From positions 124,001 through 188,000 of the IMG/VR virus record IMGVR_UViG_3300009108_000751: a stretch of 64,000 nucleotides of DNA; one strand, given 5' to 3'. Made by a program: the position numbers and the translations under genes. Positions 37,823 through 57,562 of this stretch are shown piece by piece (the first letter of the stretch is position 1; the number at the start of each line of letters is the position of its first letter). Below the pieces are notes generated by a model. That model was given only the letters and a program-made list of their open reading frames with translations, ran no database searches and was not told the origin of the DNA.

Positions 37823-38779
37823 ATGAAAACGCTACCACAGTTGTTCCAGATCCAGGACCAGTTCTCAGAACTATTCCAAAAGAAGGATGACCTTTCCTTG
37901 GAGGAGAGGGAGCGGCTAACACAGGAGTTCTCTCTAGCACTCCACAGTGAGGTGTCAGCCCTGATCAGTGAGATCAACTTTAAGAACCATCATCAGGATC
38001 GTAAGCAGGTGGTGGAGAACAGCATCCTTTTCGAGGGCGTTGATGTCTTCCGATATCTCTTAGCTATCTTAAATCTCTGGGGCTTCAGTGCAGAGGATTT
38101 CTCGCAGGCTTTCGACGACAAGGAGAACTACCTCCAGGTCAAGTATGTCAAGAACGCGCAGAAGTGGCAAGGCCAACCGGTCATCCTCGTGGATGCCGAC
38201 GATGTGATTGTGGAGTTCCGGAAGGGCTACAGTGAGTATCTTAATGCTATGGAAGGCATCGATGTTGACGTCAACTCCAAAGAATATTATTTCACCAACG
38301 GCATTCCAAAGGACCGCTACAATCCTGAGCAACTATTCCAGGATTTCATCGATCAGCGACGCCTCAGAGATTTAGAGCCTATCACGCCCACAATTCAAGC
38401 AATCAACGACTTGTACGACCAGGGCTATTGGATCCAGATTCTTACAGCTAGACCTGACTGGAACAAAACATGCCAGTATGACACTTATACTTGGCTTGAA
38501 AATAGCGGCCTAAAATTCCACAAAATTGACTTTTCGCCTGAGAAGATGATTTGGGCTGCAAATAGTGAGTATTACGATTCTGAGTCGATTGTGTGCGCTA
38601 TTGATGATAGTTCCAAGCACACTATGGAATATGCTAAGCATGGGATCAAAGTGGCATCGCCAGTCACGCCTTATAACGAGGAGTTGCGAGGGGTAGAGAA
38701 CGTCATTATGTTCGAGACAAAGCAAGAACTTGCTGATATCATTAAACAGTTCTCACTCCGGCGCATATTTAGCGTATGA
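37823..38779 (+). CDS. Fusion of an all-alpha NTP-PPase (MazG-like) and a HAD 5'(3')-deoxyribonucleotidase
   Basis: N-terminal 'SEVSAL....NFK.H', 'FEGVDVFRY'; C-terminal 'LVDADDVI', 'ILTARP', 'T..WL', 'AIDDS'. Confidence 0.75.
   Translation: MKTLPQLFQIQDQFSELFQKKDDLSLEERERLTQEFSLALHSEVSALISEINFKNHHQDRKQVVENSILFEGVDVFRYLLAILNLWGFSAEDFSQAFDDKENYLQVKYVKNAQKWQGQPVILVDADDVIVEFRKGYSEYLNAMEGIDVDVNSKEYYFTNGIPKDRYNPEQLFQDFIDQRRLRDLEPITPTIQAINDLYDQGYWIQILTARPDWNKTCQYDTYTWLENSGLKFHKIDFSPEKMIWAANSEYYDSESIVCAIDDSSKHTMEYAKHGIKVASPVTPYNEELRGVENVIMFETKQELADIIKQFSLRRIFSV
38764..38773 (+). promoter_or_regulatory. Putative late promoter (catatttagc)
   Basis: ATATTTA immediately before the start of 38776. Confidence 0.55.
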
Positions 38780-39447
38780 TGCGTATTACAGTTGGACAAT
38801 TACGAACCCTTATAAAGGAAGCAATGCAGGAGCTGAATCCTGATCTTGACCCAGATTGCAAGAGCTTTGCAGTATTTGATTTCGATGAGACGCTGGCACT
38901 GACGGATTCGAAAATTTTGATAACAGATGACCAGGGAAAAAAGATCCGATCTCTTACCCCCGCGCAGTATGCTCTTTATGTTCCCGAGCCGGGAGAGAAC
39001 TTTGACTTTAGTGAATTTGAAATTGTCAAAGACGGTAAACCAACTGCTTTGATGGATGTTCTGCGAGATGTGGCTGCCTGCGGAACCACCGCCGCGGCCA
39101 TTTTAACAGCTCGAGGCCCTAAATCACAAGACCCTATTAGAGAGTTTCTTGCAGACATGGGGGTAAAATTGCAGATAATCGACACTGTAAACACCTCAGA
39201 TCCCCAAGCCAAAGCCCGGAAGATAAAAGGCTACGTTAGATCTTATAGCCCACAAGTCTTGCACTTTTTTGAGGATTCACCTAAGAATCTCGCTGCAGTA
39301 AAGAAGATGGCAGAGTCTGATCGTGAATTTGAGAACGTAGATGTGATTTTGCATAAGATGGTGGATGGCAACAAGGTAGACGTCGAGCACGTCGTGTATA
39401 AAGGATTAAGCGCAATCGCAGCTCCTGAAGATTCAAAACACATTTGA
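38776..39447 (+). CDS. HAD-family phosphatase with N-terminal 'LRTLIKE' tag
   Basis: 'VFDFDETL', 'ILTARG', 'K', 'FFEDSPKN'. Confidence 0.8.
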   Translation: MMRITVGQLRTLIKEAMQELNPDLDPDCKSFAVFDFDETLALTDSKILITDDQGKKIRSLTPAQYALYVPEPGENFDFSEFEIVKDGKPTALMDVLRDVAACGTTAAAILTARGPKSQDPIREFLADMGVKLQIIDTVNTSDPQAKARKIKGYVRSYSPQVLHFFEDSPKNLAAVKKMAESDREFENVDVILHKMVDGNKVDVEHVVYKGLSAIAAPEDSKHI

Positions 39448-39472
39448 ACAACTAGCTTACTCAACATATAAT
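39444..39472 (+). promoter_or_regulatory. sigma70-like promoter TTGAAC-N17-TATAAT
   Basis: Spacing counted; upstream of the ThyX-like gene. Confidence 0.75.
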
Positions 39473-39501
39473 AACTTATAACTTCACACAAGGAGGCAGT
39501 T

Positions 39502-40485
39502 TTGCCACAGAACCTTAGTCTTGAGCCCGTTACCCTTCCTATGCCCCTTCGCTTCGGCGAGGAACCACAGACCGAGTTTGTCAATGATCTTGACGCACTG
39601 CGTGTTGAGCTTGTCGATAGTCCAACAGCTGAGCAGATGCGTCATGTGGCATATCGCTACGTGAAGGCAACGTGGGCCGACGCGCCCGAAGATACTGATC
39701 CGATGAATGCAACTCAAAAAGAGTTGTCAGAAACTCTTGAGGACGTGATGCAGTTTCGAGCACTCCCAGCCGGAATGGAGGCTATGAGCTTTACATTCTT
39801 AATCGGCGGGATCGATCTGCAGACCGTCACTCACCTAATCCGTCACCGTGCCGGCACCTTTGCAGCACAATGCACCGGTGATCGCTGGCAGTCGCATAGC
39901 CGAGTACTGGCACCTGCTGCTGTTCAAAACAGCCCGGAAATCTATGGCCGCTGGAAGGACCACATTGAAGCAGGCAAGAAGCTTTACGCAGATATGATCG
40001 ATACTAGGCAGATCAGCATTATGGACGCACGGACCATTCTGCCCCGTGCTATCGAAACCTTCTACTACGCGCGTTTCAACCTGAAAGATCTGATCGGTTT
40101 CATCCGCCAGCGATGTGACAAGCAGATCCAGCCCGCAGCAGACAACCTGATGGCTGCCAAGATGGCTCTGGAAGTTTGCAAGGTTATTCCTGAGGCTGCA
40201 GCCTGCATCGGTACTCGGACCCTTACTGCGCCTGCCATGCACTACGTTCGCAACATGCGCACTGGCACCGGAACCAACCTCTACTGGCCTGATGCCGACA
40301 CCGATGCACACATTGAGTATCACCCCAACGACACCATCTATCAAGCTGAGCGTGATGATGTTAATGGCACCAACCCTCCGCCTGATGAGGCAGGTGAGAA
40401 TAGTAAGTTTCGGCAGCACTGGAATGCGCTTCTCGCACAGATCAGTGACATCGAGATGGAATACAAGGATAAAATGGGTCGCTAA
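39502..40485 (+). CDS. Divergent ThyX-family flavin-dependent enzyme
   Basis: 'E.MSFTF.I.G', 'THLIRHR', 'DAR.ILP', 'F...R'; canonical S-x-R-Y replaced by 'CTGDR'. Confidence 0.8.
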   Translation: MPQNLSLEPVTLPMPLRFGEEPQTEFVNDLDALRVELVDSPTAEQMRHVAYRYVKATWADAPEDTDPMNATQKELSETLEDVMQFRALPAGMEAMSFTFLIGGIDLQTVTHLIRHRAGTFAAQCTGDRWQSHSRVLAPAAVQNSPEIYGRWKDHIEAGKKLYADMIDTRQISIMDARTILPRAIETFYYARFNLKDLIGFIRQRCDKQIQPAADNLMAAKMALEVCKVIPEAAACIGTRTLTAPAMHYVRNMRTGTGTNLYWPDADTDAHIEYHPNDTIYQAERDDVNGTNPPPDEAGENSKFRQHWNALLAQISDIEMEYKDKMGR

Positions 40486-40486
40486 C

Positions 40487-40759
40487 TTGCCTTTCTCTAA
40501 TCCAAACACAGCACGAAGGCGCCGGGCCATTTACCGGTGCTTTCACTTAGGTCTCACTTACTTTTCGATTAATGAGGCTCTTAATAATCAGGACGAAAAA
40601 CCCTTGTCGATCGAAGATTATAAAGTTTGGAAATCTCTGCTTTACCCAATCTCAGCGGGAGATACCCTTATGAAGAAAGCTATTATCGAAGAGGGTAAAT
40701 CCCTGTCTTGGGTTGCGAAACAGATAAATAAGAGGCGACAAACCCAGACGCTATCATGA
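40487..40759 (+). CDS. Hypothetical protein
   Basis: 3' part of ORF 40292-40759; TTG directly after the ThyX stop, stop overlaps the next ATG. Confidence 0.5.
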   Translation: MPFSNPNTARRRRAIYRCFHLGLTYFSINEALNNQDEKPLSIEDYKVWKSLLYPISAGDTLMKKAIIEEGKSLSWVAKQINKRRQTQTLS

Positions 40760-40965
40760 AAGAGCTAGATTTGCACGGTCTCACTCACGATCGAATAAGG
40801 GATATCGTCACAAGTTGGGTTCACAGCAACCCTCCTCCTTGCAAGATTATCACAGGAAATAGTGCTGCTATGGAGAAGCTGGTTCGAGAAGCTCTTGACA
40901 AGCACTATCGCTGTGAGTATGAAAGCTATCACAATCTAGGAGCACTCATTGTCACAAGAAGATGA
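40756..40965 (+). CDS. Stand-alone Smr-domain protein
   Basis: 'LDLHGL', 'IITG', 'N.GAL.V'. Confidence 0.8.
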   Translation: MKELDLHGLTHDRIRDIVTSWVHSNPPPCKIITGNSAAMEKLVREALDKHYRCEYESYHNLGALIVTRR

Positions 40966-41173
40966 AGAAAAAGTAGTCGAATTACCCGAAGAGTTTGCGG
41001 GCCTCGACCTGTACACAAAATCAGAATATGAAGCTGGAAGAGCGCTAATCATGGGGCTTATCCATTCCCTTCAAATTGAACAATCTAAAGCTCAGCTGTA
41101 TTTTATGCTCATACCACTAGCGTTTTCAGTCGGATTACTGCTAGGTTACTACATTTCATTTATTAACCTTTGA
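40949..41173 (+). CDS. Small membrane protein
   Basis: C-terminal hydrophobic helix. Confidence 0.55.
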   Translation: MSQEDEEKVVELPEEFAGLDLYTKSEYEAGRALIMGLIHSLQIEQSKAQLYFMLIPLAFSVGLLLGYYISFINL

Positions 41174-41186
41174 GAGGATATCACAA

Positions 41187-41624
41187 ATGAAGGTTTATAT
41201 CGCATCCCCGTTCTTTAACCCCAAGCAAGTTGAGCAAGTTGAGTTTCTTAAAGAAGCCCTCACTGCAGCAGGTCATGAATACTTTAGCCCAAAGGATTTC
41301 TTTGTGCTCAAGCCTAATGCTACGCAAGAGGATCGCACACGTATCTTTGATGTGAACTGCGAGAAGATCCAGTGGGCTGACTTTGTCCTGTGCAACACGG
41401 AAGCCAAGGATCTTGGCACTATTTGGGAGGCAGGTTATGCTTACGGCATCGAAAAGCCGGTCGTCTTCTTTGCTGAGGGCTTGCCCGATGGTAAGTTTAA
41501 CGTGATGCTTAGTGAAGCCGGCAAGTCAGTCAACACCACGCGTGAGCAGATGCAAGACTACCTTAGTCGTGTTTCCGACGCAGGGGAGCTCATCTTCGAA
41601 CAATATTCAGGATTTACTCAGTAG
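41187..41624 (+). CDS. Nucleoside 2-deoxyribosyltransferase / N-glycosidase family (NDT, MilB, DNPH1-like)
   Basis: 'VYIASPFF', 'FSP', 'DLGTIWEAGYA' (catalytic Glu), 'KPVV', 'NVML'. Confidence 0.88.
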   Translation: MKVYIASPFFNPKQVEQVEFLKEALTAAGHEYFSPKDFFVLKPNATQEDRTRIFDVNCEKIQWADFVLCNTEAKDLGTIWEAGYAYGIEKPVVFFAEGLPDGKFNVMLSEAGKSVNTTREQMQDYLSRVSDAGELIFEQYSGFTQ

Positions 41625-41758
41625 TGAGAAAGACCCTACTGTTACTCTTTGCTTTTGGTTTAATGGCATCGTGTGTTCATAAGCCTAGGGTTACTATCCA
41701 AGGGTGGCGTCTAGTGCTTGATTGCGACCCCCAGGAACCTGCTTGCGAAGAGTTTTAA
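41624..41758 (+). CDS. 44-aa predicted lipoprotein (below ORF-track cutoff)
   Basis: GTG overlaps the upstream TAG; MRKTLLLLFAFGLMAS-C lipobox; translated by hand. Confidence 0.6.
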   Translation: MRKTLLLLFAFGLMASCVHKPRVTIQGWRLVLDCDPQEPACEEF

Positions 41759-41778
41759 GATTTAACAGGAGAAATAAA

Positions 41779-42336
41779 ATGAAATTCTTAAAAAATACAA
41801 TCACACACCTTGCACTAGCTTTTATGATTTTAGCTGGTGCTCCATCAACAGCAATGGCCGATGACCATGCTGTTGATATCACCGGAGACAGCGCGGACTG
41901 GAAAAAGCGTTCAGGCCTTCGGTTTGGGTATAACTACCTTAGTAACGGAGATAAACCCACTAATGGTGAAGAGGCAAAGCTTCGTAGCCCGCATATGTTT
42001 GCCATAGGCTATGAGCTTCAACAGACTATGTCAGGCGGCGACTGGTTAGACATCTTGTTTATCCAGAACGTTACCATTAGCGGCCTAGAGCAGAGTGTCA
42101 TTGCACCTTCTGCAAATGTTTTGGTGGGCTTTGAGATTAATGACACGCTTCAGCTAGCTGTAGGTGGCAACCTCTCGGTCTATGACCCATCTCCGGACGG
42201 AAACTATATCCACCTTGTAACTGCTTTGGGCTTTACAGCTGCCGCAGGAAAGCTGAGTGTTCCACTTCATCTTGTGTATGTTCCTGACGTTAACGGGTTC
42301 TGGCGGTTTGCGATCACCACCGGCGTGAACTGGTAG
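41779..42336 (+). CDS. Secreted outer-membrane beta-barrel-like protein 1
   Basis: SD aggag, signal peptide ending AMA, alternating beta-strands, C-terminal 'TTGVNW'. Confidence 0.6.
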   Translation: MKFLKNTITHLALAFMILAGAPSTAMADDHAVDITGDSADWKKRSGLRFGYNYLSNGDKPTNGEEAKLRSPHMFAIGYELQQTMSGGDWLDILFIQNVTISGLEQSVIAPSANVLVGFEINDTLQLAVGGNLSVYDPSPDGNYIHLVTALGFTAAAGKLSVPLHLVYVPDVNGFWRFAITTGVNW

Positions 42337-42346
42337 GAGAAGAACG

Positions 42347-42874
42347 ATGAGATATCTGTTAATTTTTAGTTTATTGCTACCTGCAGCTGCCCAAGCGGAT
42401 GAGCAACGGATCGGTTTCGTTGCTGGCTCTACACACGGCGTAGGCTTAGGATACAGTAGGCAGCATAAGGACGGAACGGGCTGGCAAGTCTCAGCTCTTC
42501 CGATTGTTGAGGATGACTTTGATGCCACCGTTTTTCTCGGGGGAACCTACTTCAAGACTCTAAACTCCACAAGCTGGGGTCGTGCATACTGGTCATTAGG
42601 AATGGCTGCTTTTTACAATCGGAATACTGACGAGCAGTTTGAGTGGGTTTGCGACGCTAATGATGAGAACTGTCGCGACGTAAGTCAGGGATCACGCTTG
42701 GATGAAGGCCTTATGCTTTCCTTTGGTCCGGGCGTAGGCTTGGAACGACGCTGGAAGCAGTTCGCTGTGTCTCTAGAGCTTCCCCTTGCAGTCCAGATCG
42801 GCTATGTCGAGCACAAGGTCCAGTTCTTGGGTATGCACCCAATTCCGAACTTCTCTCTAATGTATTTCTGGTAG
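42347..42874 (+). CDS. Secreted outer-membrane beta-barrel-like protein 2
   Basis: Signal peptide ending AQA, 'GLGY', 'GPGVGLE', C-terminal 'LMYFW'. Confidence 0.65.
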   Translation: MRYLLIFSLLLPAAAQADEQRIGFVAGSTHGVGLGYSRQHKDGTGWQVSALPIVEDDFDATVFLGGTYFKTLNSTSWGRAYWSLGMAAFYNRNTDEQFEWVCDANDENCRDVSQGSRLDEGLMLSFGPGVGLERRWKQFAVSLELPLAVQIGYVEHKVQFLGMHPIPNFSLMYFW

Positions 42875-42888
42875 GAGATTGCAGGTAG

Positions 42889-43215
42889 ATGCGCTTCGAG
42901 CTTATCACTGAAGAAAACCTTGACGACTATACCGACAACGGTGAGTTTCCTAACTTTGTTCATTATCCCATGAAGAAACTAAGAGAAGATTTCTATGATG
43001 TTAAGAAGAAAGATACACTCATCTTCTGGGGCGCCGAAGGTCACAATATAAAATCGAAGAATGTCACGTTAAAATCCATCGGAAAGTTTGACGGGACGCT
43101 AGAAGAAGCATTAGATGTCTTGAAATCTTCTTTGCCGCCAAGCCAGGTGATGCTTGTTCATACTGAGCACGGTGAGATATACAGAGCAATTGTTCCTCGA
43201 AGGAGAATGAGATGA
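42889..43215 (+). CDS. Hypothetical protein
   Basis: SD, stop overlaps the SDR start. Confidence 0.65.
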   Translation: MRFELITEENLDDYTDNGEFPNFVHYPMKKLREDFYDVKKKDTLIFWGAEGHNIKSKNVTLKSIGKFDGTLEEALDVLKSSLPPSQVMLVHTEHGEIYRAIVPRRRMR

Positions 43216-44180
43216 AATTTGTTATTACAGGTGAAGCCGGTTTTATCGGGCGCAACCTCCCTCTAGCATTTGAGAAGCACGGTCACACGTTTGTTTCACT
43301 ACTTAATCATTCAGCTTTTGTTTGTCTCCCTACAGGTGAGCCCTGTGTGCATCGCAACTCAGAAGATCGCTGGTTCTCTGTCCTGGAAGAGAATGATATC
43401 GACCTGGTGATCCACAATGCAGCCTTGGTAGGCACGGATGTGGTGGCACTAAACCCAAACGAAGCATCCCTAACTAACGTCTCAGGCACACACATCATCT
43501 GTCGTGCAGCAGAACGAGCTGGAGCTGCCGTCTCCTATATGGGCACCACAGTGATCTACAATACTGCGCTTTACCAGCGCATTAAGATCCATGAACGATC
43601 TGAGCATCTACCTAAGACGCTTTACGGCTCTCAAAAGCTTGCGTCAGAATACATCGTTCAGAGTGCATGCACCCGCTGGAATGTTGTTCGCCCGCTCTTC
43701 GCTTACGGCGGCGTGGGTGACATGAACTCTCTGATTGCCAAAACCCTCTACGCTTCTCGTGATGGTCGTGATAGCATCAATATGTTCCTGGATCCGATGA
43801 AGGTGAAAGATTACATGCACGTTACCGACTACTGCGATGCCGTTGCCCTATCCTGCCACCTGCAGATGTGGGGTAGCGACTACAATGTCGCAGCTGAGAA
43901 CCCTTATAACACTCGTGAGATCGTGGAGATGATGTCCGAGGTCTCGGGCCGCGACCTAGAAGAGGTGATCAAATGGCACCCGCACACCGACTACCTCGGA
44001 AACCATCGCCTTCTTTCCAAGAAGTTTAGAGATGCCACGGGATGGGAGCCGAAATACACACTCCTCCAAGGCATTCAGGAATCCTGGGAGTCAATCTTGG
44101 AAGATAGAAGCGGCTACAATCCCCTCGTGTACCTGGATGAAGCAGATAAGCGCGGATTAGATCTCACGCAGTTCTACTAG
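43212..44180 (+). CDS. Divergent NAD-dependent epimerase/dehydratase (extended SDR)
   Basis: 'ITGEAGFIG', 'HNAA', 'YGSQK', 'KDYMHV.D'. Confidence 0.88.
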   Translation: MKFVITGEAGFIGRNLPLAFEKHGHTFVSLLNHSAFVCLPTGEPCVHRNSEDRWFSVLEENDIDLVIHNAALVGTDVVALNPNEASLTNVSGTHIICRAAERAGAAVSYMGTTVIYNTALYQRIKIHERSEHLPKTLYGSQKLASEYIVQSACTRWNVVRPLFAYGGVGDMNSLIAKTLYASRDGRDSINMFLDPMKVKDYMHVTDYCDAVALSCHLQMWGSDYNVAAENPYNTREIVEMMSEVSGRDLEEVIKWHPHTDYLGNHRLLSKKFRDATGWEPKYTLLQGIQESWESILEDRSGYNPLVYLDEADKRGLDLTQFY

Positions 44181-44183
44181 GCT

Positions 44184-44212
44184 GTGTAAATCTCTTACTT
44201 ATAGAATATAAT
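44184..44212 (+). promoter_or_regulatory. sigma70-like promoter GTGTAA-N17-TATAAT
   Basis: Spacing counted; upstream of the helicase. Confidence 0.7.
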
Positions 44213-44233
44213 AGGGCGCAAGGAGAACCTCAC

Positions 44234-45859
44234 TTGTCACTTCAAGACGCCTTTCCATTTGACGAACCACGTCAGGCACAGATCGATGCCATCGCTTTCA
44301 CTATTAATACTTTCTTAAAAAGTGATAAACGCTTCTGTATCATCGAGGCAGGAACCGGCGTAGGTAAGTCTGCTATCGGTGTCACCATCGGACGAGTTCT
44401 TAACTCTAAGTACGAGCAGTTTACCGACCAGGATCCTGTCAAAGGTACATACTTTGTCACCACGCAGAAGATCTTGCAAGACCAGTACGTCAAGGATTTC
44501 GGTGGCTACGGTAAGAAGATGAAATCTATCGCTTCCTCTGCTAACTACCCATGTAGATATCATAAGGGCAATAGCTGCGGTGAGTCAAAGCAACTCCTCA
44601 GAACAGCCGAGAGATCTAGTAAGTTCTTCAAAGTTTGCACGATGAACTGCAACTACAATCAGGCGAAGGACGAGTTTATTAACTCGCCCGAGTCAGTGGT
44701 CAACTTTCCCTACCTGCTCACCGAGGCAACCTACAGCGGCAAGCTTAAACCGCGTCACTTGCTGGTGCTAGACGAGGCACACAATATCGAGTCACAGCTT
44801 AGTCGCTTCATCGAGGTGTCAGTTTCGGAGTGGTTCTCTAAAAAGACACTCAAAGCAGGTTGGACGAAGGCAGAAACTCAGTTTCAAGCACATAAGTGGA
44901 TCAGCGAAGTTTACTACACCAAAGTTTGCGACCGACTCAAGCACATCGAAAAGATGATGAGCAAATACGGCGGGCTAAAAGACAAGCTAGATGAGATGAT
45001 GGGTTTCGCCAAGCAGTTGGACATGTTGCGCTCTCATGTTGATCGGCTCCGCATGTTTCTCAAGCACTACGACAAGGAAAACTGGATCGTGGAGTTCGAG
45101 AACTACAAAGGTCGAGGCAAACGCCGCATTACCTTCAAACCTGTGGATGTGTCCAAATTTGGGCAGGATTACCTTTTTAGGCTAGGGACCAAGGTTTTAA
45201 TGATGTCGGCGACGATCCTTGACAGAGAAGCATTCTGTCAATCTCTGGGTATCTCTGCGGGTGATGTGGAGTTTCTTTCTCTGCCTTCACCCTTTCCGAC
45301 GGAAAATCGACCTATCATCGAACTACCGGTGGGGCCAATGAATGCCAAAGAGATCGACAACACCCTGCCCAAGATGGCGAAGGTCGTGGAGGAGTTATTG
45401 GAAGCACATCCCGACGAGAAAGGGATTGTCCACTGCCACACGTTCAAGATTGCCAACTACCTAAAAGACAACATCAATTCCAAGCGCCTGCTCATTCACG
45501 AGACATCAAATCGGGAGGAGATGCTGCAAAAGCACATGCAGTCAAACAAACCAACGGTTCTGCTTAGTCCGTCAATGTCAGAGGGTGTGGATCTACGTGA
45601 TGACTGCTCACGCTTCCAGATTATCTGCAAGATCCCGTATCCCTACTTGGGTGACAAGGTGGTGAAGAAGCGCATGAACAAGTGGCCCGGCTGGTATCCC
45701 CTCCAAACCGCGAAATCCATCGTCCAGGCAGTAGGGCGCAGTATCCGGTCTGTAGACGATCACGCAGTGACTTACATTTTAGATGGCCAGTGGCGTAGCT
45801 TTTACGGAAGGAACAAGAAGTTCTTTCCTGATGATTTTCAAAAATGCATTAAGAGGTGA
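44234..45859 (+). CDS. DinG/XPD-family helicase
   Basis: Q-motif 'PR..Q', 'AGTGVGKS', Cys cluster, 'DEAH', 'SAT', 'EGVD', 'QAVGRSIR...D'. Confidence 0.92.
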   Translation: MSLQDAFPFDEPRQAQIDAIAFTINTFLKSDKRFCIIEAGTGVGKSAIGVTIGRVLNSKYEQFTDQDPVKGTYFVTTQKILQDQYVKDFGGYGKKMKSIASSANYPCRYHKGNSCGESKQLLRTAERSSKFFKVCTMNCNYNQAKDEFINSPESVVNFPYLLTEATYSGKLKPRHLLVLDEAHNIESQLSRFIEVSVSEWFSKKTLKAGWTKAETQFQAHKWISEVYYTKVCDRLKHIEKMMSKYGGLKDKLDEMMGFAKQLDMLRSHVDRLRMFLKHYDKENWIVEFENYKGRGKRRITFKPVDVSKFGQDYLFRLGTKVLMMSATILDREAFCQSLGISAGDVEFLSLPSPFPTENRPIIELPVGPMNAKEIDNTLPKMAKVVEELLEAHPDEKGIVHCHTFKIANYLKDNINSKRLLIHETSNREEMLQKHMQSNKPTVLLSPSMSEGVDLRDDCSRFQIICKIPYPYLGDKVVKKRMNKWPGWYPLQTAKSIVQAVGRSIRSVDDHAVTYILDGQWRSFYGRNKKFFPDDFQKCIKR

Positions 45860-46623
45860 TCATGAGCGAAGACGAAGAAAATAAGCTTGGTAAAGTCATT
45901 GAGTTTCCTTATCATAAGCTTAGGAAAAACTCTGCACCTACCGAAGAAAAATATGTCAATGCGCTTGACCGTTTTGACCCGTCAGAGATGGAAGATGCCA
46001 CGCTGGTAGCTACTTTGCAATCTTGCCCGCTCTATGTGATCGGAGACGTGTTTGATCCTCGCTGGTGGGCTCGACGCGTCGCCTGGATGATGAGGCTTGG
46101 AATGTCAACTAATCATCCTGTTGTTGGAGACGTTTTTCCAGAGATCAAGCACTGCACTTTAATCGAATACAGTTTTCCCAAGCTCGATTTATGCTGGTTC
46201 GACCAAGATACGATGCTCTCTGCAATTAAGATTGTGACAGATAAGTCGATCAAGCAGAATGACATCGATGTTGCAGAGAGATCCTTAGATCGAAAAGGCC
46301 ACAATCCCAAGAAGTATCTACTAAGTTTCTTTGAGCCTAACCCAAAGATTAACACGTCAGATTGGGAAGTTATTCCTATGGCGGATTTCTCATATACGCT
46401 CCACGACATGGCAGATGCCTTAGGTGAAAACCTTGATATGGCTCGGAGCTTAGATGATTGCGGTTCGTGGATGCTTCTGCTGGACGAGTTTACTACACGT
46501 TACCTGTCATATTACAACAGAAACGATGCCAACAACACAGCCATGATGCGCTACTTCGCACAGCAGTTAGGCCTAGACAAGATACTGGATAAAGTGGCCA
46601 AACAGGGCACTGGATTATTTTAA
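45856..46623 (+). CDS. Hypothetical protein
   Basis: 255-aa ORF coupled to the helicase. Confidence 0.7.
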   Translation: MIMSEDEENKLGKVIEFPYHKLRKNSAPTEEKYVNALDRFDPSEMEDATLVATLQSCPLYVIGDVFDPRWWARRVAWMMRLGMSTNHPVVGDVFPEIKHCTLIEYSFPKLDLCWFDQDTMLSAIKIVTDKSIKQNDIDVAERSLDRKGHNPKKYLLSFFEPNPKINTSDWEVIPMADFSYTLHDMADALGENLDMARSLDDCGSWMLLLDEFTTRYLSYYNRNDANNTAMMRYFAQQLGLDKILDKVAKQGTGLF

Positions 46624-46625
46624 AG

Positions 46626-46635
46626 CATATTTAGA
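46626..46635 (+). promoter_or_regulatory. Putative late promoter (catatttaga)
   Basis: ATATTTA upstream of 46650. Confidence 0.65.
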
Positions 46636-46649
46636 AACAGGAGAAAATA

Positions 46650-47783
46650 ATGGGCGGTGCAGCTGGACATATGGCACATCCTTTCGATCTTCCCGCAGTT
46701 CGAAATGGAAAAGACCTGATCAAGTTCTTTGACGACGCGTCAGAATACCTTGCCAATAATGAGTCGAGCGTAAAGATCGACGGCGTCAATGTAAGCTTTA
46801 AGCTCGTCGACGGGCCGAACGGCAAAGAGTTCGCGATGGATCGTGGAAGCTTAAGCCCGCTGGATATCGGTGGCATCACTCGAGCGAAACTTGACCAACG
46901 CTTTCCAGAGGGTCACGGTATGATCGCGGCAGGAAACGAGATGCTCGATCTGCTTAACACTGCACTCCCGGACATTCAATCAGAGCTTGAAGAGCTCGGA
47001 ATGTACGACGATCCGACAATGTTCCTAAACACGGAGTATGTTTCAGGCAAGACCAATGTGACAGATTACGACCAGAAGTTTCTGGCCATTCACGGTCTCA
47101 ACCAGTTCTACGAGAAGATATCACGCATCAAGAGTAAAGCGCGTCGACCAGGCGCTCCACGACCGGAAGGGGTAAAAGCTCCTAGTGCGGAAGTAGCATA
47201 TGACAAATCCGTCATGAAGCGTCTTATTGACAAGCTTGGAGCTGCAGCCAAGAAGCAAGGCTTCGAGGTTTACGGTGATGTCCCGGCTGCTCTCAAAGGA
47301 GATGCTCAGACTGCTGATTTCTCCGGCACTCTCTCGTCGCCGTTTGAGGTGGTGAGGTCCGAGGGCGAAGCGGAAACTAAACCCTTGTCCCAATGGCTTC
47401 AGGCAGCAAACCACCCGGGAGTTGAAAAGATAACTTTAGGTAGCGGCAAGAAGGTGAATGCTCTCAGCAAAGAGGTCTATATGTCCATTATCGATGGAGT
47501 GCCCGTTGATGAGCTTGTCCCAGACTCAGGCCAACAGCAGACTGCCATTGACGCAGCAGTCATCTACCATGCTACTCGAATGCTAGGAAACGATATCCTT
47601 GATGTGCTTACCTCACCAATGGGCGATGTTCGCGCTCACGAAGGTGTGGTTCTCCGAGACGAGCGCTTTGGTTCACGCCCAGTAAAGATCACGGGTGATT
47701 TTATCGTAGGTGGCTTGGAATCTGCGTTCCAGAAGAACGAAAGCCTTCTCAGGAACTACGTTAAAGCTATTCTTAAATCTTAA
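46650..47783 (+). CDS. Ligase-like covalent nucleotidyltransferase-fold protein (DUF6267-like) with C-terminal tag
   Basis: 'GHMAHPFD', motif I 'VKIDG.N', 'NTEYV', 'HEGVVLR', 'PVKITG'; ends 'ESLLRNYVKAIL'. Confidence 0.6.
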   Translation: MGGAAGHMAHPFDLPAVRNGKDLIKFFDDASEYLANNESSVKIDGVNVSFKLVDGPNGKEFAMDRGSLSPLDIGGITRAKLDQRFPEGHGMIAAGNEMLDLLNTALPDIQSELEELGMYDDPTMFLNTEYVSGKTNVTDYDQKFLAIHGLNQFYEKISRIKSKARRPGAPRPEGVKAPSAEVAYDKSVMKRLIDKLGAAAKKQGFEVYGDVPAALKGDAQTADFSGTLSSPFEVVRSEGEAETKPLSQWLQAANHPGVEKITLGSGKKVNALSKEVYMSIIDGVPVDELVPDSGQQQTAIDAAVIYHATRMLGNDILDVLTSPMGDVRAHEGVVLRDERFGSRPVKITGDFIVGGLESAFQKNESLLRNYVKAILKS

Positions 47784-48451
47784 TCGATCGCGGTTCGGAT
47801 GAACGCGCGCAACAGGCTTTCCTGTAAAGCTTTCCCAGATAGGATGTCAAAGATCGCCTGCTTTGAAGCATCACTCAGCTGGAAGGGAAGCATGTCTTTA
47901 AATGCCTCTTCATTCCCGTCAACCAGGTGGCGCCGCATATCGGTGCCGCTTACTGGGACAGTTTCATTGCGATCAAGGGCGACTTTGTCCAGCTTCTCAA
48001 GTACGAAATCTTGATCCAAATACCTCAGCAACTGTTCTTCGCTGTAGTTGTTTTCGATATCAACTGGGTCCGAGTAGATAGTAAAGTGATCTTCAGAGTT
48101 TTGCTCAGAGGAATTCTGTAGAAGCTCATACGCTTTGCGAATAGGCGCGCCCCCGGTGCCTAGAAGATGAAGCGTGACGTTGCTAGGTAGTATTTTGCCT
48201 AGATGATCCTCCCAGACTTTTCGCATGTCATCTCCGTAGATCGGGTGCACCCCGGGCTTCGGTACTTCGATTTTTCTTGCGCCCTGCTTGACCGTCCGCG
48301 TGTCGCTTGGATCTTTAATCTTTCTAACGCCCCTGCTAGACAGAGAGACGAAGAGCTCCACTTTGTCGTTTTCCTTTGCAGCCTTTTCGACCATAGCATG
48401 ATGCCCGGCGTGATAAGGCTTAAAACTACCTGCGACTATTCCGACTTTCAT
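47780..48451 (-). CDS. HIGH-type nucleotidyltransferase (cytidylyltransferase-like) with C-terminal tag
   Basis: 'GSFKPYHAGH', 'VSGT.MR'; ends 'ESLLRAFIRTAID'; the only clear minus-strand gene. Confidence 0.85.
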   Translation of the reverse strand: MKVGIVAGSFKPYHAGHHAMVEKAAKENDKVELFVSLSSRGVRKIKDPSDTRTVKQGARKIEVPKPGVHPIYGDDMRKVWEDHLGKILPSNVTLHLLGTGGAPIRKAYELLQNSSEQNSEDHFTIYSDPVDIENNYSEEQLLRYLDQDFVLEKLDKVALDRNETVPVSGTDMRRHLVDGNEEAFKDMLPFQLSDASKQAIFDILSGKALQESLLRAFIRTAID

Positions 48452-48465
48452 AATGAAACTCCAGG

Positions 48466-48475
48466 CATAAATATT
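48466..48475 (-). promoter_or_regulatory. Putative late promoter on the minus strand (aatatttatg)
   Basis: Reverse complement has ATATTTA upstream of the SD and ATG at 48451. Confidence 0.6.
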
Positions 48476-48535
48476 GAATCGAATTTATTATAACACACGT
48501 ATGTAGATTTACACGGTCCGGGGTAGTATTAATAC

Positions 48536-54404: not shown

Positions 54405-54435
54405 GAAGGGGGCCTCTGTGCCCCCTTCTTTATTT
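54405..54435 (+). terminator. Intrinsic terminator
   Basis: gaagggggc-ctctgt-gcccccttc followed by tttattt. Confidence 0.8.
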
Positions 54436-54445
54436 GGAGACAAAA

Positions 54446-55375: not shown

Positions 55376-55386
55376 CAGTAGACCAT

Positions 55387-55396
55387 CATATTTATT
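55387..55396 (+). promoter_or_regulatory. Putative late promoter (catatttatt)
   Basis: ATATTTA upstream of 55423. Confidence 0.65.
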
Positions 55397-55410
55397 CCTG
55401 ATAGTGCACC

Positions 55411-55462
55411 CGGAGTGTTTTTATGAATCTCACTGAAAATGATTTACGCCTTCTGGTTCGCA
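55411..55462 (+). repeat. 52-bp RBS plus N-terminal tag module, copy 1
   Basis: 49/52 nt identical to 56098-56149. Confidence 0.9.
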
Positions 55463-56049
55463 GTATTCTACGGGAAGAATCAGCAAAACCTGGCCCGTCC
55501 AGCGTGAACAAAGCAGATTTTTATCAGAAGCTCCCTGTGGAGAAGCAAGATGATCTGCAAAAAGCTGTCGATAAGTTTGCTAAAGCACAAGTCCCCACGC
55601 TTGTCAATGTCGCAAAAAACATGTCAGGAAAGTCAGGTAAAAAAAGCTCAGAAGTACTCGCATCTTTTCTAAAAAATCCTACGCTTAAAATTCCTCCAAT
55701 GAAGCTAGGAAGAAATTTAAAACTAGGTGGTGAGTTTGGAGCTGGTAATAATTCAAAAGTAAAAGCTGTCGTTGAAAAGGGAAAGCTCAAAGGGTTTACG
55801 TTCTCAGGCGAGCTTGGCCCAGGCTTGGAAATTAAAAATGTTTTCGTACAGACCCCTACGATCTCTCTCAGCAAAGAAGCGACAGCCGAGCTAGACATGG
55901 GTCTAACGCAGGACATGGCTAGCGCAAAAGCAGGCCTAAACTATAAGATTCCAGGCGGATCTATAACAGGTGCAGCAGCAGGAAATATAGCTCTCGATTC
56001 ATCCAAGTCCGATTATGAATTCTCTATTGGCTTAAGCAAGAAGTTCTAA
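55423..56049 (+). CDS. Late hypothetical protein, N-terminal tag and beta-rich C-terminus
   Basis: 'MNLTENDLRLLVRSILREE'; ends 'EFSIGLSKKF'. Confidence 0.7.
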   Translation: MNLTENDLRLLVRSILREESAKPGPSSVNKADFYQKLPVEKQDDLQKAVDKFAKAQVPTLVNVAKNMSGKSGKKSSEVLASFLKNPTLKIPPMKLGRNLKLGGEFGAGNNSKVKAVVEKGKLKGFTFSGELGPGLEIKNVFVQTPTISLSKEATAELDMGLTQDMASAKAGLNYKIPGGSITGAAAGNIALDSSKSDYEFSIGLSKKF

Positions 56050-56097
56050 AATGAGAAAATCTACAGGAATTTGTTGCATATCTATTAAAATAGATCA

Positions 56098-56149
56098 CGG
56101 AGTGTTTTTATGAAGCTCACTGAAAACGATTTACGCCTTCTGATTCGCA
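56098..56149 (+). repeat. 52-bp RBS plus N-terminal tag module, copy 2
   Basis: See 55411-55462; preceded by the late-type motif catatctatt at 56077. Confidence 0.9.
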
Positions 56150-57516
56150 ACATCCTGCGCGAGCAGGACGAAGAAGAAGTTGAAGAAGAAACCGAAGAAG
56201 AGGCTGAGGCCGAAGAAGCGGTCGTTGAACCCGAAGTCAAAGAACCCGAGGTTGATCCTGAGCTCCAGTCCCTAGCAAAGGAATATGAAGACGCAAGTTC
56301 ATTTAAAGCGAAAGCTGAGGCTATAGCTAATATCTTGCGTCGCCCTGAGTTCTTTGGAACTGATATCGTAGGGCCCACCAAAGGGAAGCAGGTAAAAGGC
56401 AAGAATTCCATGCGGTTCGGAGTAGGTGCAGGTGCAAAAGACAAGCATGATTTTAAAGACATCGCTGATAAGATCTATGCTGTCTTGGCTCCAGAAAAAG
56501 TAAATCCAGTTCGCGTGTTCGGTCCCGATACTGGCCCCAATGAGAGCGGAACTTACACATCTTATGTTCTTCCTGACCTGGACAACCTAATGTTCACGTT
56601 CGGAGGAGCAGGTGAGACATCTGGACAACGCAAAGGTGGCTACGAATATGAGATGAACGTGATCTTCCCGAACCTGAAGGATGCAGGTTTAGAAGCAGAG
56701 CTTGGCGCAGATAATACAATCTCAGATGTTTACGTTGTGACTAAGGATGGCAAGCTTGGTATTGAGGTAAAACTCCCTGACGCACAGCTCGGTGAACCCA
56801 CACTCAAGTATAATATTAAAGATAAATCTTTCTTCCCGTCAGTTGAGAAGGGCATTAACGTAGATGTAGCTAATCTGATCAATGCTGACGACACAAGCAC
56901 AGACGCTTATAACCGAATGGTGATTATTCGTGATAAGGTCAACACACAAAGATCAGCTGACGGAGAAGATTCTGAGCTTTCACCCTTCCAGGACATTATC
57001 GATAAGATCACTAGAGCCGAGTATGACCAGATTGTTAAGCCTGCCCTGCGCGCAGACACAGAAGCAGGAAGTGATATCAGCGGAGTGAAGATCGGTGAGT
57101 TTAAGATCGGTTCTGACCGCATGAGGGACTACTACCTTGGAAAGAAAGCAGGCCTAGTTCAAGTGAAGGGTAAGGGACTCTATCATTTGCATCCGGATTT
57201 TGAGATCAAGATTAAAGACGAGGATGGCAACGAGAAGAGAACCATCCTCTTCGACTTCAGTGATCAAGTCTCAGGCGGAGTCCAGTTTCGAAACATGAAG
57301 GGCAACCGATATGGCATCAGATCAGACACAAGAAGTGCTCCTCTTAAAAAGATCCGACAGTCCCCCATCGATCTTGACAGCGAAGCTGACAGAGAGGCAT
57401 TCGCAGCAGTTGTGCCTGACATGACCTTTCCAGATCCAAAATCTTTGATGGATGACAAATCCCTAGCAGAGTCAGTTCAAAACCGCTGGCAACTTTTGGC
57501 CGGCATAAAAGAATAA
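56110..57516 (+). CDS. Late protein with a putative PD-(D/E)XK nuclease domain, tagged at both termini
   Basis: 'MKLTENDLRLLIRNILRE', acidic tract, 'G.EYE', 'SDVYV.......IEVK', C-terminal 'ES..NRWQLLAGIKE'. Confidence 0.6.
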   Translation: MKLTENDLRLLIRNILREQDEEEVEEETEEEAEAEEAVVEPEVKEPEVDPELQSLAKEYEDASSFKAKAEAIANILRRPEFFGTDIVGPTKGKQVKGKNSMRFGVGAGAKDKHDFKDIADKIYAVLAPEKVNPVRVFGPDTGPNESGTYTSYVLPDLDNLMFTFGGAGETSGQRKGGYEYEMNVIFPNLKDAGLEAELGADNTISDVYVVTKDGKLGIEVKLPDAQLGEPTLKYNIKDKSFFPSVEKGINVDVANLINADDTSTDAYNRMVIIRDKVNTQRSADGEDSELSPFQDIIDKITRAEYDQIVKPALRADTEAGSDISGVKIGEFKIGSDRMRDYYLGKKAGLVQVKGKGLYHLHPDFEIKIKDEDGNEKRTILFDFSDQVSGGVQFRNMKGNRYGIRSDTRSAPLKKIRQSPIDLDSEADREAFAAVVPDMTFPDPKSLMDDKSLAESVQNRWQLLAGIKE

Positions 57517-57562
57517 ATTTCACCGCGTTGTGTTATAATCCATAGTAAGCAACGGAGAGAGC

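What the first reader, a model, noticed from the sequence alone, without database searches (positions are those of the whole stretch)
38776..48475. Possible virion-delivered nucleic-acid repair / nucleotidyl-transfer kit
Seen: 46650 has ligase-superfamily motifs (KxDG, E, EGxV, K), 47780(-) is a HIGH nucleotidyltransferase, and 38776 is a DxDxT HAD phosphatase. All three have a late promoter and the tag. 46650 and 47780 are convergent, share the TTAA at 47780-47783 as overlapping stops, and both end in 'ESLLR'. Known: T4 Pnkp (HAD 3'-phosphatase) with Rnl1 repairs tRNA cut by host PrrC, and NMNAT-like HIGH enzymes can rebuild NAD+. Inference: pre-packaged counter-defence against tRNA-cleaving or NAD-depleting immunity.
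Basis: inference. Interest (0 to 1): 0.62.

Follow-up and report, generated by a model that had tools for sequence, protein, structure and literature searches.

The report
Tagged phage end-repair enzyme trio
A marine T4-like phage encodes a ligase-like enzyme, an adenylyltransferase and a phosphatase that other phages fuse into one protein, and each carries a short end-tag resembling T4's capsid-loading signal, so they are probably a nucleic-acid repair kit shipped inside the virus head.

Summary
Gene 46650 encodes a divergent ligase/capping-fold enzyme. Gene 47780(-) encodes a HIGH adenylyltransferase of the NMNAT/PPAT class. Gene 38776 encodes a catalytically intact HAD phosphatase whose nearest solved structures are the 3'-phosphatase domains of T4 Pnkp and bacterial Pnkp1.

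The three belong together. In hundreds of uncultured aquatic T4-like phages the ligase-like and HIGH domains are fused, in either order. Several polyproteins carry HIGH-HAD-...-ligase in one chain.

It is a terminal amphipathic helix found on at least 18 proteins of this phage's 235-kb genome. The ATATTTA motif is real too; it also precedes the portal, scaffold-like, sheath, tube and fibre genes.

In homologues with an N-terminal extension, the ligase-like domain nearly always starts right after an (L/I/V)-x-E site, which is the T4 gp21 cleavage rule. Some extensions read MKTFKQFILNE, against T4's capsid-targeting sequence MKTYQEFIAE. The phage encodes a gp21-type protease.

Capsid loading is therefore well supported by inference but not shown. 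The substrate is unknown. No kinase partner for tRNA repair was found, and no Nampt for NAD+ rescue. The ligase-like family is uncharacterised and lies near Pfam DUF6267.

The parts
46650..47783 (+). Ligase-like enzyme (covalent nucleotidyltransferase fold, DUF6267-related), 377 aa. Its mature start is probably Gly2 of GGAAGHM.
47724..47780 (+). C-terminal tag of the ligase-like protein (..NESLLRNYVKAILKS): a helix on a flexible linker.
   Evidence: Tag hits. The model shows helix 359-376 after a linker of low confidence at 357-364.
46627..46633 (+). ATATTTA late-type promoter motif, 23 nt before the ATG and followed by a GGAG ribosome-binding site.
47780..48451 (-). HIGH-motif adenylyltransferase (NMNAT/PPAT class), 223 aa. 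It is the only minus-strand gene of the 78-kb contig.
   Evidence: Pfam PF01467 and PF08218. A profile of homologues matches archaeal NMNAT MJ0541 at 4.9e-9, PPAT at 6e-7 and other NMNATs at 7e-4. It is homologous to the HIGH domain of the fusions.
47783..47833 (-). C-terminal tag of the HIGH protein (..ALQE|SLLRAFIRTAID), preceded by an L-x-E site.
48468..48474 (-). ATATTTA motif 23 nt upstream of the HIGH gene. A TTATAAT (sigma-70-like -10 element) lies at 48487-48493(-).
47780..47783 (.). TTAA palindrome that gives both convergent genes their stop codons.
38776..39447 (+). Pnkp-type HAD phosphatase, 223 aa, with an N-terminal tag (MMRITVGQLRTLIKEAMQE|L).
38765..38771 (+). ATATTTA motif only 11 nt before the HAD start codon. 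Its function is doubtful; it would imply a leaderless transcript, or the gene is translationally coupled instead.
55423..56049 (+). Further tagged protein (MNLTENDLRLLVRSILRE..), 208 aa and basic, with ATATTTA at 55388-55394.
56110..57516 (+). Further tagged protein (MKLTENDLRLLIRNILRE..), 468 aa. Its C-terminus NRWQLLAGIKE matches that of the scaffold-like protein beside the capsid gene.
62438..63064 (+). Further tagged protein (MNDKDLRKLIAEE..), 208 aa and acidic.

Best explanation
The three genes are the split form of one conserved phage enzyme module. Its parts are an NMNAT/PPAT-class HIGH adenylyltransferase, a Pnkp-type HAD phosphatase and an Rnl1-like ligase-fold enzyme related to DUF6267.

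Shown: in most relatives the ligase-like and HIGH domains form one polypeptide. In some relatives all three domains sit in one polyprotein.

Shown: in this phage the module is cut into three proteins, and each piece carries its own copy of a terminal amphipathic helix.

Inferred: this helix works like the capsid-targeting sequence and propeptides of phage T4. It docks the protein to the prohead core, and the gp21-type prohead protease may clip it at (L/I/V)-x-E. The enzymes would then stay in the head and enter the cell with the DNA. Expression from the same ATATTTA late promoter as the portal, sheath, tube and fibre genes fits this timing.

Inferred, with less confidence: inside the cell the kit heals and seals broken polynucleotide ends. 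The HAD would remove a terminal 3'-phosphate, and the ligase-like enzyme would join ends through a lysyl-AMP at K42.

The HIGH domain sits where T4 Pnkp has its kinase, and its role is open. It may adenylylate a terminal phosphate, or it may supply an adenylylated cofactor.

Whether the substrate is phage DNA or host RNA is unknown.
For: Functional linkage
- More than 1000 homologues were found, mostly fusions of about 650 aa with the ligase-like domain followed by PF01467.
- Microcystis phage Mel-JY01 has the reverse domain order.
- The exhaustive search found 656 clusters at 50% identity.
- The HAD is fused in the L036 and L084 polyproteins and in P0170, P0174, P0185 and P0186. It stands about 3 kb upstream of the fusion gene in six other loci.

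Folds
- Ligase-like enzyme.
- HAD.
- HIGH domain profile.

Capsid targeting
- The head module is of T4 type: Portal_T4, Peptidase_S77 and Gp23.
- Peptidase_S77 is present in 5 of 5 other large contigs that carry the family.
- Of 76 distinct homologues with an N-terminal extension, 74 have Glu at P1 and all 76 have L/I/V at P3, directly before GGAAGHM. A further 112 start Met1-GG.
- Among the 50%-identity representatives, 85 of 88 have Glu at P1 and 87 of 88 have L/I/V at P3.
- Short extensions read MKTFKQFILNE, MKSFKQFIINE and MISFKQFVLE. The T4 capsid-targeting sequence is MKTYQEFIAE (PMC8442874).
- T4 Alt loses both an N-terminal peptide (after ITE-6) and a C-terminal peptide (after LTE-619) (PMC5694885).
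- Tag position is complementary. By a simple amphipathic-pattern score, 93 of 122 Met1 forms carry a C-terminal tag, and several forms it missed also end in a tag. By contrast, 32 of 48 forms with a long N-terminal extension end at the ligase-like domain.
- Tagged genes are enriched for a directly adjacent ATATTTA: 7 of 18 against 12 of 246 (P 6e-5).
- A tagged 138-aa ORF lies between the protease gene and the scaffold-like gene.

Precedent
- NMNAT-like or cytidylyltransferase proteins were found by mass spectrometry in virions of cyanomyoviruses S-CBWM1, S-SZBM1, S-SCSM1 and S-CREM2 (PMC10665884).
- S-CREM2 gp154 begins MKNFSSFLTE.
Against: - There is no proteomic or biochemical datum for this phage or this family.
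- The ligase-like protein's own C-terminal tag follows K-N-E, not L-x-E, so cleavage is not predicted for it.
- The genes lie in the replication and nucleotide-metabolism part of the genome, between a helicase gene and the DNA polymerase gene, not in the head module.
- Other tagged proteins include an NT5C-like nucleotidase. This would also fit a tag that assembles a cytoplasmic nucleotide-metabolism complex.
- Motif V has one lysine (VKITG) where ligases have two.
- No sequence profile links the family to a known ligase family. PF09414 gives only weak hits, best E 0.023, in 3 of 24 members.
- No polynucleotide kinase was found, so ends bearing 5'-OH cannot be healed by the classical route.
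Confidence: 0.5

Rival explanations
1. The trio is a late cytoplasmic enzyme complex and is not packaged. On this reading the terminal helices are docking peptides. They would hold separately encoded enzymes together, or fix them to a replication or packaging hub. The (L/I/V)-x-E before GGAAGHM would be part of a helix-capping motif rather than a cleavage site.
For: - The genes sit among replication and nucleotide-metabolism genes.
- Several tagged proteins are nucleotide-metabolism enzymes: this HAD, and an NT5C-like protein of 639 aa.
- When the module is split, every piece keeps a tag. A self-assembly signal would give the same pattern.
Against: - The Met1-GG forms have nothing upstream of GG, so the Glu is not part of the domain.
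- For N-terminal tags the h-x-E site lies after the helix. For many C-terminal tags it lies before the helix. That mirrored layout fits removable propeptides.
- The extensions closely resemble the T4 capsid-targeting sequence.
- A tagged ORF lies inside the head module.
- Published mass spectrometry found HIGH enzymes in cyanomyovirus virions.
Confidence: 0.22
2. The ligase-like protein is the phage's own DNA ligase. It would seal nicks in replicated concatemers before or during packaging, with the HAD cleaning 3'-phosphates. It would not be a counter-defence tool.
For: - No PF01068, PF01653 or PF09511 ligase was found in G001 or in three complete related genomes. This is therefore the only ligase-like gene.
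- It lies between a helicase gene and the DnaE-like polymerase gene.
- From my own knowledge: T4 DNA ligase is needed for encapsidation of T4 DNA (Zachary and Black 1981). I did not check this here.
Against: - The best structural neighbours are RNA ligases (Rnl1, Rnl5, Trl1, Rnl3, Rnl2), which rank ahead of most DNA ligases; one, Pmar-Lig, ranks third.
- A replicative ligase would not need a late promoter, a tag, or obligatory fusion to a HIGH enzyme.
- From my own knowledge: many T4-like cyanophages lack a DNA ligase and use the host's.
Confidence: 0.15
3. The HIGH enzyme is an NMN adenylyltransferase, and the kit restores NAD+ after depletion by Thoeris, SIR2 or similar defences.
For: - The HxGH and SGTxxR motifs are present, and the best sequence neighbours are archaeal NMNAT and NadR.
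- NMNAT-like virion proteins of cyanophages have been interpreted this way in the literature.
Against: - Scores lie far below every NMNAT equivalog cut-off (30.6 bits against 341 for TIGR01526).
- PPAT matches almost as well as NMNAT.
- No Nampt/NAPRTase was found in four genomes.
- An NAD+ pathway does not explain the near-universal fusion to a ligase-fold domain and a capless Pnkp-like HAD.
Confidence: 0.08
4. The module transfers AMP to something other than a broken nucleic-acid end. Candidates are a cap-like 5' modification, a protein, or a small-molecule phosphate.
For: - Motif V is atypical.
- HIGH enzymes normally adenylylate small phosphomonoesters.
Against: - The HAD's nearest structures are polynucleotide 3'-phosphatases of RNA-repair enzymes.
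- RNA ligases outrank capping enzymes.
Confidence: 0.1

Closest known systems
T4 Pnkp + Rnl1 RNA repair (healing and sealing of tRNA cut by PrrC)
   Same: - It pairs a HAD 3'-phosphatase with a lysine-adenylating ligase.
- The best structural neighbours of the two models are exactly these T4 proteins.
- In the polyproteins the order HIGH-HAD mirrors the kinase-phosphatase order of Pnkp.
   Different: - There is no P-loop kinase; a HIGH adenylyltransferase stands in its place.
- The Pfam Rnl1 model finds nothing.
- There is an insertion of about 165 aa between motifs IIIa and IV, and a conserved N-terminal GGAAGHMxHPFD.
- The proteins carry targeting tags, and the genes are preceded by a late-type promoter motif.
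T4 capsid-targeting sequence and propeptides of internal proteins and Alt
   Same: - A short amphipathic terminal peptide ends at (L/I)-x-E.
- The genome encodes a gp21-type protease.
- Tags sit on diverse, unrelated cargo proteins.
- Small tagged ORFs are clustered like the T4 internal-protein genes.
- Alt shows that a C-terminal propeptide can also exist.
   Different: - The tags here are longer, 15-20 aa of the type KITxxQLRxIIREE.
- The same motif is used at either end, and even at both ends of one homologue (P0010).
- The cargo consists of nucleic-acid and nucleotide enzymes.
- Neither loading nor cleavage has been shown.
Pfam DUF6267 (PF19782), an uncharacterised phage family
   Same: - The nearest ESM Atlas clusters by language-model features score 0.97.
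- The nearest by fold gives TM 0.91 over 370 residues.
- About a quarter of the members of those clusters carry DUF6267.
   Different: - The DUF6267 HMM matches neither this protein nor any frame of five genomes that carry the family, even at E up to 1.
- No paper in the held library mentions DUF6267.
NMNAT-like or cytidylyltransferase proteins detected in cyanomyovirus virions (S-CBWM1, S-SZBM1, S-SCSM1, S-CREM2)
   Same: - They are HIGH-motif nucleotidyltransferases of cyanomyoviruses, at least some of them T4-like.
- They were found in purified virions by mass spectrometry.
- S-CREM2 gp154 begins with an N-terminus resembling the capsid-targeting sequence, MKNFSSFLTE.
   Different: - Only the HIGH motif region aligns with this family (hhalign probability 60%).
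- They have no ligase-like or HAD partner.
- tblastn with the window's proteins finds no cultured cyanomyovirus.

Membership tests
Covalent nucleotidyltransferase superfamily (ligases and capping enzymes) | Nucleotidyltransferase fold | tested here: met
Covalent nucleotidyltransferase superfamily (ligases and capping enzymes) | Motif I lysine (KxDG), plus motifs III, IIIa and IV | tested here: met
   K42-I-D-G, E129, F144/H148 and E331-G-V-V-x-R336 are invariant in 24 and 32 homologues.
Covalent nucleotidyltransferase superfamily (ligases and capping enzymes) | Motif V with two lysines (KxK) | tested here: inconclusive
   Only K346 is present (V-K-I-T-G); the second position is Thr348, which is invariant.
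Covalent nucleotidyltransferase superfamily (ligases and capping enzymes) | Formation of a covalent lysyl-NMP intermediate | not testable with these tools
   This needs a labelled-ATP or NAD+ adenylylation assay, with a K42A control.
T4 Rnl1 family (Pfam RNA_lig_T4_1) | Match to the family profile | tested here: not met
   No Pfam hit for the protein. PF09511 finds nothing in four genomes, although the control genomes were silent too. Profile searches of PDB sequences return no ligase.
T4 Pnkp (polynucleotide kinase-phosphatase) | HAD 3'-phosphatase domain with DxDxT and a capless core | tested here: met
T4 Pnkp (polynucleotide kinase-phosphatase) | P-loop 5'-kinase domain | tested here: not met
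   The protein is a single HAD domain plus a tag. No AAA_33 match above cut-off was found in G001 or in three complete related genomes.
NMN adenylyltransferase (NadM/NadR type) | HxGH and SxTxxR motifs on a Rossmann-like fold | tested here: met
   GSFKPYHAGH and VSGTDMRR. The profile matches MJ0541 at 4.9e-9.
NMN adenylyltransferase (NadM/NadR type) | Reaches a curated equivalog score; NMN specificity | tested here: not met
   TIGR01526 scores 30.6 bits against a cut-off of 341. All NMNAT models match only the first 30-50 residues or so. PPAT matches nearly as well. Substrate specificity cannot be tested here.
T4-type capsid-targeted internal proteins | Terminal targeting peptide ending in an (L/I)-x-E site | tested here: met
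   HAD..AMQE. HIGH: ALQE|SLLR... Across the family, P1 is Glu in 74 of 76 and 85 of 88 cases, and P3 is L/I/V in 76 of 76 and 87 of 88. The window's own ligase-like protein has KNE instead, so the feature is not met for that one site.
T4-type capsid-targeted internal proteins | A gp21-type prohead protease and a T4-type head in the same genome | tested here: met
   Peptidase_S77, Portal_T4 and Gp23 lie just upstream of the window. The protease is present in 5 of 5 other genomes that carry the family.
T4-type capsid-targeted internal proteins | Physical presence in virions and proteolytic processing | not testable with these tools
   The phage is uncultured, and only marine DNA metagenomes hold it. 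The only precedent is more distant HIGH enzymes of cyanomyoviruses.
Phage NAD+ reconstitution pathways (Nampt + NMNAT type) | A Nampt/NAPRTase partner gene | tested here: not met
   PF04095 is absent from G001 and from three complete related genomes.
Pfam DUF6267 | Match to the PF19782 profile | tested here: not met
   No hit. The only links are fold similarity (TM 0.91) and language-model similarity (0.97) to clusters of which about a quarter of members carry DUF6267.

The most novel reading that the evidence does not exclude
The HIGH adenylyltransferase replaces the polynucleotide kinase of classical RNA repair. It would activate a terminal phosphate (for example a 3'-phosphate) by adenylylation. 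Together with the Pnkp-like HAD and the ligase-fold domain, the phage could then rejoin nuclease-cut ends without a kinase. This would be a new healing-and-sealing chemistry. Pre-loaded in the capsid of hundreds of marine T4-like phages, it would be ejected with the DNA as a first-minute antidote to tRNA- or DNA-cutting defences.
Probability: 0.12. Interest if true: 0.9.

Novelty: new variant of a known kind. Interest (0 to 1): 0.7.

Why it matters
It is largely unknown what marine T4-like phages carry in their heads besides DNA.

This finding gives a readable signal: a terminal tag followed or preceded by an (L/I/V)-x-E site. With it, candidate ejected proteins can be listed from sequence alone.

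It also points to a large, unstudied enzyme family of 656 clusters at 50% identity. The family combines a ligase fold, a HIGH adenylyltransferase and a Pnkp-type phosphatase.

If the enzymes are packaged, repair enzymes would join T4 Alt and the internal proteins as injected cargo.

If the HIGH domain substitutes for the kinase, that would be a new route of polynucleotide repair and a possible laboratory tool.

All of this can be tested with ordinary assays and with one cultured phage, Mel-JY01.

Tried and rejected
- **Complex prediction.** For the ligase-like protein with the HIGH protein the job gave no verdict: score 0.31 against a mark of 0.34, controls 0.00. I do not count this for or against binding.
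- **Cultured-phage searches.** Megablast of the region found nothing. tblastn with the ligase-like protein found only Mel-JY01. tblastn with the HIGH protein and with a 24-aa tag peptide found nothing.
- **Family scans of the ligase-like protein.** Pfam, PHROGs and NCBIfam gave no hit. PDB sequence searches with the single protein and with profiles returned no ligase.
- **DUF6267 HMM.** It was not detected in five genomes, and no papers mention the family.
- **RNA evidence.** Only marine DNA metagenomes hold the sequence, so I did not use read laying. Transcription starts remain untested.
- **S-CREM2 gp154.** Only the HIGH motif aligns, so it is a precedent and not an orthologue.
- **Atlas search of protein 56110.** Scores were at most 0.84, with restriction-endonuclease-like leads; I rejected these as noise.
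- **ADP-heptose-type sugar-nucleotide pathway.** I considered it (HAD as GmhB, HIGH as RfaE domain II, plus the nearby epimerases). I dropped it because epimerases are not conserved neighbours of the module in other phages and because it leaves the ligase-fold domain unexplained.
- **Gene neighbourhood in 80 loci.** It gave primase, an SbcD-like nuclease, terminase and portal as frequent neighbours, but no functionally decisive partner.

Full report
**Setting**

The window is bases 9529-73528 of a 78-kb IMG/VR viral contig. The same phage, at 99.995% identity, is present as a 235,681-bp contig (G001; window coordinate + 124,000), which CheckV rates 70% complete. Only marine DNA metagenomes hold the sequence.

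Just upstream of the window lies a T4-type head module. It comprises a terminase, a Portal_T4 portal, a Peptidase_S77 (gp21-like) prohead protease, several small ORFs, an acidic scaffold-like protein of 476 aa and a Gp23-type capsid protein.

The window itself holds two tail-sheath paralogues, a tail tube and tail fibres. It also holds UvsX, DnaB, ribonucleotide reductase, a dUTPase/NT5C fusion, ThyX, a helicase and a DnaE-like polymerase. No cultured phage is close; the polymerase is below 30% identical to its nearest match.

**Checking the observation**

All sequence statements are correct.

- Gene 46650-47783 encodes 377 aa with VKIDG (K42), E129, HEGVV and VKITG.
- Gene 47780-48451(-) encodes 223 aa with GSFKPYHAGH and VSGTDMRR. 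It passes the Pfam cut-offs for CTP_transf_like and Citrate_ly_lig.
- Gene 38776-39447 encodes 223 aa with DFDET.
- The two convergent genes share TTAA at 47780-47783 as overlapping stop codons.
- Both proteins carry ESLLR near the C-terminus.

**The promoter motif**

ATATTTA precedes the three genes by 23, 23 and 11 nt.

In G001 the motif occurs 29 times, 26 of them on the coding-rich strand. Nineteen copies lie 5-70 nt upstream of an ORF start, on the sense strand. Only 3.7% of strand positions fall in such windows, giving a binomial P of about 9e-21. Among all 35 permutations of the heptamer it is the most concentrated upstream of genes. The runner-up is TTATAAT, which looks like a host-type -10 element.

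The genes behind ATATTTA include those for the portal, the scaffold-like protein, the sheath, the tube and a tail fibre. Reading it as a late or structural promoter is therefore reasonable.

The copy before the HAD gene is only 11 nt from an ATG that overlaps the upstream stop codon. That one is doubtful.

**The tag**

A strict pattern, L[LIVM]Rx[LIVMFY][LIVM][RK] or a close variant of it, hit five ORFs in the contig. Each hit lay within 12 residues of a terminus.

An HMM built from nine tags found further proteins in G001 that start MKITKRKLRQIIKEEL, MKITASKLRQIIREEV, MNEKLLRQIIRQEL and similar. At least 18 proteins are tagged. Of the non-seed hits, 8 of 12 are terminal, where 8% would be expected (P about 1e-6).

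Tagged genes are enriched for a directly adjacent ATATTTA: 7 of 18 against 12 of 246 (P 6e-5).

In both AF2 models the tag is a separate helix on a linker of low confidence. It is therefore not part of the enzyme folds.

**What the three proteins are**

*Ligase-like protein.* It has no Pfam, PHROG or NCBIfam match. Its AF2 model has pLDDT 89.

Motif residues K42, R65, E129, H148, E331-G332, R336 and K346 are invariant. Motif V has one lysine where ligases have two.

The family is near Pfam DUF6267 by fold (TM 0.91) and by language-model features. It is not near by HMM.

*HIGH protein.* Through a profile of its homologues it matches the archaeal NMNAT MJ0541 (4.9e-9), PPAT (6e-7) and other NMNATs (7e-4). 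It scores far below every curated NMNAT cut-off.

*HAD.* All catalytic residues are conserved. Its model (pLDDT 81) has as its three nearest solved structures:

These stand ahead of MDP-1 at 11.5. The margin is small, but it agrees with the PHROG match to the "polynucleotide kinase" family.

**They belong together**

The word search found more than 1000 relatives of the ligase-like protein. Most are proteins of about 650 aa in which the ligase-like domain is followed by a PF01467 HIGH domain. Microcystis phage Mel-JY01 has the reverse order. The exhaustive profile search counted 656 clusters at 50% identity.

Architectures are varied, and nearly all of those examined include the HIGH domain.

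The HAD of the window has homologues inside polyproteins of the form HIGH-HAD-DUF192-...-ligase. Examples are L036 (1149 aa), L084 (1364 aa) and four further representative clusters. It also has stand-alone homologues about 3 kb upstream of the fusion gene in six loci.

**Evidence that the tag is a capsid-loading signal**

1. The ligase-like domain either begins at Met1-Gly2 (112 distinct proteins) or follows an extension of 7 to more than 1000 residues.
   - In 74 of those 76 extended proteins the residue before GGAAGHM is Glu. The residue three positions before it is always L, I or V.
   - In the more independent 50%-identity representatives the counts are 85 of 88 and 87 of 88.
   - This is the cleavage rule of the T4 prohead protease. 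Alt is cut at ITE-6 and LTE-619, and gp21 has LIE-9 (PMC5694885 and PMC9026906).
2. Short extensions read MKTFKQFILNE, MKSFKQFIINE, MTTFKEFYQLISE and MISFKQFVLE. The T4 capsid-targeting sequence is MKTYQEFIAE (PMC8442874).
3. All six large genomes checked, G001 and five others that carry the family, encode a Peptidase_S77 protease.
4. There appears to be about one tag per polypeptide.
   - By a simple amphipathic-pattern score, 93 of 122 Met1 forms carry a C-terminal tag; several forms it missed, including the window's closest relatives, also end in one.
   - By contrast, 32 of 48 forms with long N-terminal extensions end at the ligase-like domain.
   - In this phage, where the module is split three ways, each piece has its own tag.
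   - One homologue (P0010) carries the same motif at both ends.
5. N-terminal tags end in h-x-E. Many C-terminal tags are preceded by h-x-E, for example ALQE|SLLR.. and ..VDE|VMRLIMERGILR. This is the layout expected for removable propeptides. T4 Alt likewise loses a C-terminal propeptide.
6. A tagged 138-aa ORF lies between the protease gene and the scaffold-like gene. The tagged protein 56110 also shares its C-terminal NRWxLLAGIK with the scaffold-like protein.
7. Mass spectrometry has found NMNAT-like or cytidylyltransferase proteins in virions of four cyanomyoviruses (PMC10665884). The S-CREM2 protein starts MKNFSSFLTE. It is only distantly related to the window's HIGH protein.

None of this is direct evidence for this phage.

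**What the kit does**

Both structural searches point to the T4 pair that heals and seals broken tRNA. The classical route, however, needs a 5'-kinase. No kinase lies in the module, and no AAA_33-type kinase reached the cut-off in G001 or in three complete related genomes. In the polyproteins the HIGH domain occupies the place of the Pnkp kinase.

An NAD+ rescue role is weakly disfavoured. There is no Nampt/NAPRTase, PPAT matches almost as well as NMNAT, and the HIGH domain is nearly always tied to the ligase-like domain.

These genomes have no other recognisable ligase. A role in sealing the phage's own DNA therefore remains a serious rival.

My best reading is a capsid-loaded end-healing and sealing kit of unknown substrate. 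My confidence differs by step:

| Step | Confidence |
|---|---|
| The three enzymes form one functional module | about 0.9 |
| The 46650 protein has a ligase fold | about 0.9 |
| The enzymes are loaded into the capsid | about 0.6 |
| They repair broken polynucleotide ends | about 0.4-0.5 |
| The role of the HIGH domain | open |

**Limits**

- The complex prediction for the two convergent gene products gave no verdict and is not used as evidence.
- No RNA data exist for this phage.
- The counts across homologues are not phylogenetically independent, although the extension types are diverse.

Noticed in passing
window 4960-8091 and 8128-11232: Two tandem tail-sheath paralogues, each over 1000 aa. 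The first has its own ATATTTA motif.
   Followed up: partly
window 48989-52879, with the head genes in L005:1097-10042: A T4-type head (gp20 portal, gp21 protease, gp23 capsid) is combined with a DnaE-like Pol III alpha polymerase instead of a family-B polymerase. No cultured relative reaches 30% identity.
   Followed up: partly
window 56110-57516 and L005:6664-8094: The tagged 468-aa protein ends in NRWQLLAGIKE. The scaffold-like 476-aa protein beside the capsid gene ends in NRWALLAGIK. This may be a second shared signal, perhaps for capsid binding.
   Followed up: partly
window 642-1061 and 1185-1682: Tandem paralogous ORFs whose first 21 residues are identical (MNSPPCRNHANKIKEKIMPKV).
   Followed up: no
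window 37823-41624, 43212-44180 and 54434-58588: A dense set of nucleotide and sugar-nucleotide genes: a dUTPase_2+NT5C fusion, a ThyX-like protein of 327 aa, a nucleoside 2-deoxyribosyltransferase, two NAD-dependent epimerases and a dehydrogenase. Together they hint at a modified base or a sugar decoration of the DNA.
   Followed up: no
window 48487-48493 (-), and genome-wide in G001: TTATAAT is the second most upstream-enriched heptamer of its composition (13 of 54 copies). It probably marks host-type early promoters. One copy lies just upstream of the late motif of the HIGH gene, so that gene may be read both early and late.
   Followed up: partly
G001 223585-228584 (L099:3585-8584), outside the window: A late-promoter operon. 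It encodes a tagged NT5C-like 5'-3' deoxyribonucleotidase of 639 aa with a second, internal tag, followed by five small tagged ORFs. The layout recalls the T4 internal-protein genes.
   Followed up: partly
L036:5604-9053 and L084:1168-5262: The polyproteins of related phages also contain a DUF192 (COG1430) domain and a conserved basic segment (..GSGRRLYTDENP..) between the HAD and the ligase-like domain; L036 also has a Cys-rich segment there. The functions are unknown.
   Followed up: no
G001, G003, G004, G005 (whole genomes): None of these genomes, three of them complete, has a recognisable ATP- or NAD-dependent DNA ligase. The DUF6267-like protein is their only ligase-fold gene.
   Followed up: yes
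window 47724-47833: The two ESLLR tails share the codons GAA AGC CT and then diverge. With the palindromic TTAA junction, this suggests that an inverted duplication split an ancestral ligase-HIGH fusion.
   Followed up: no
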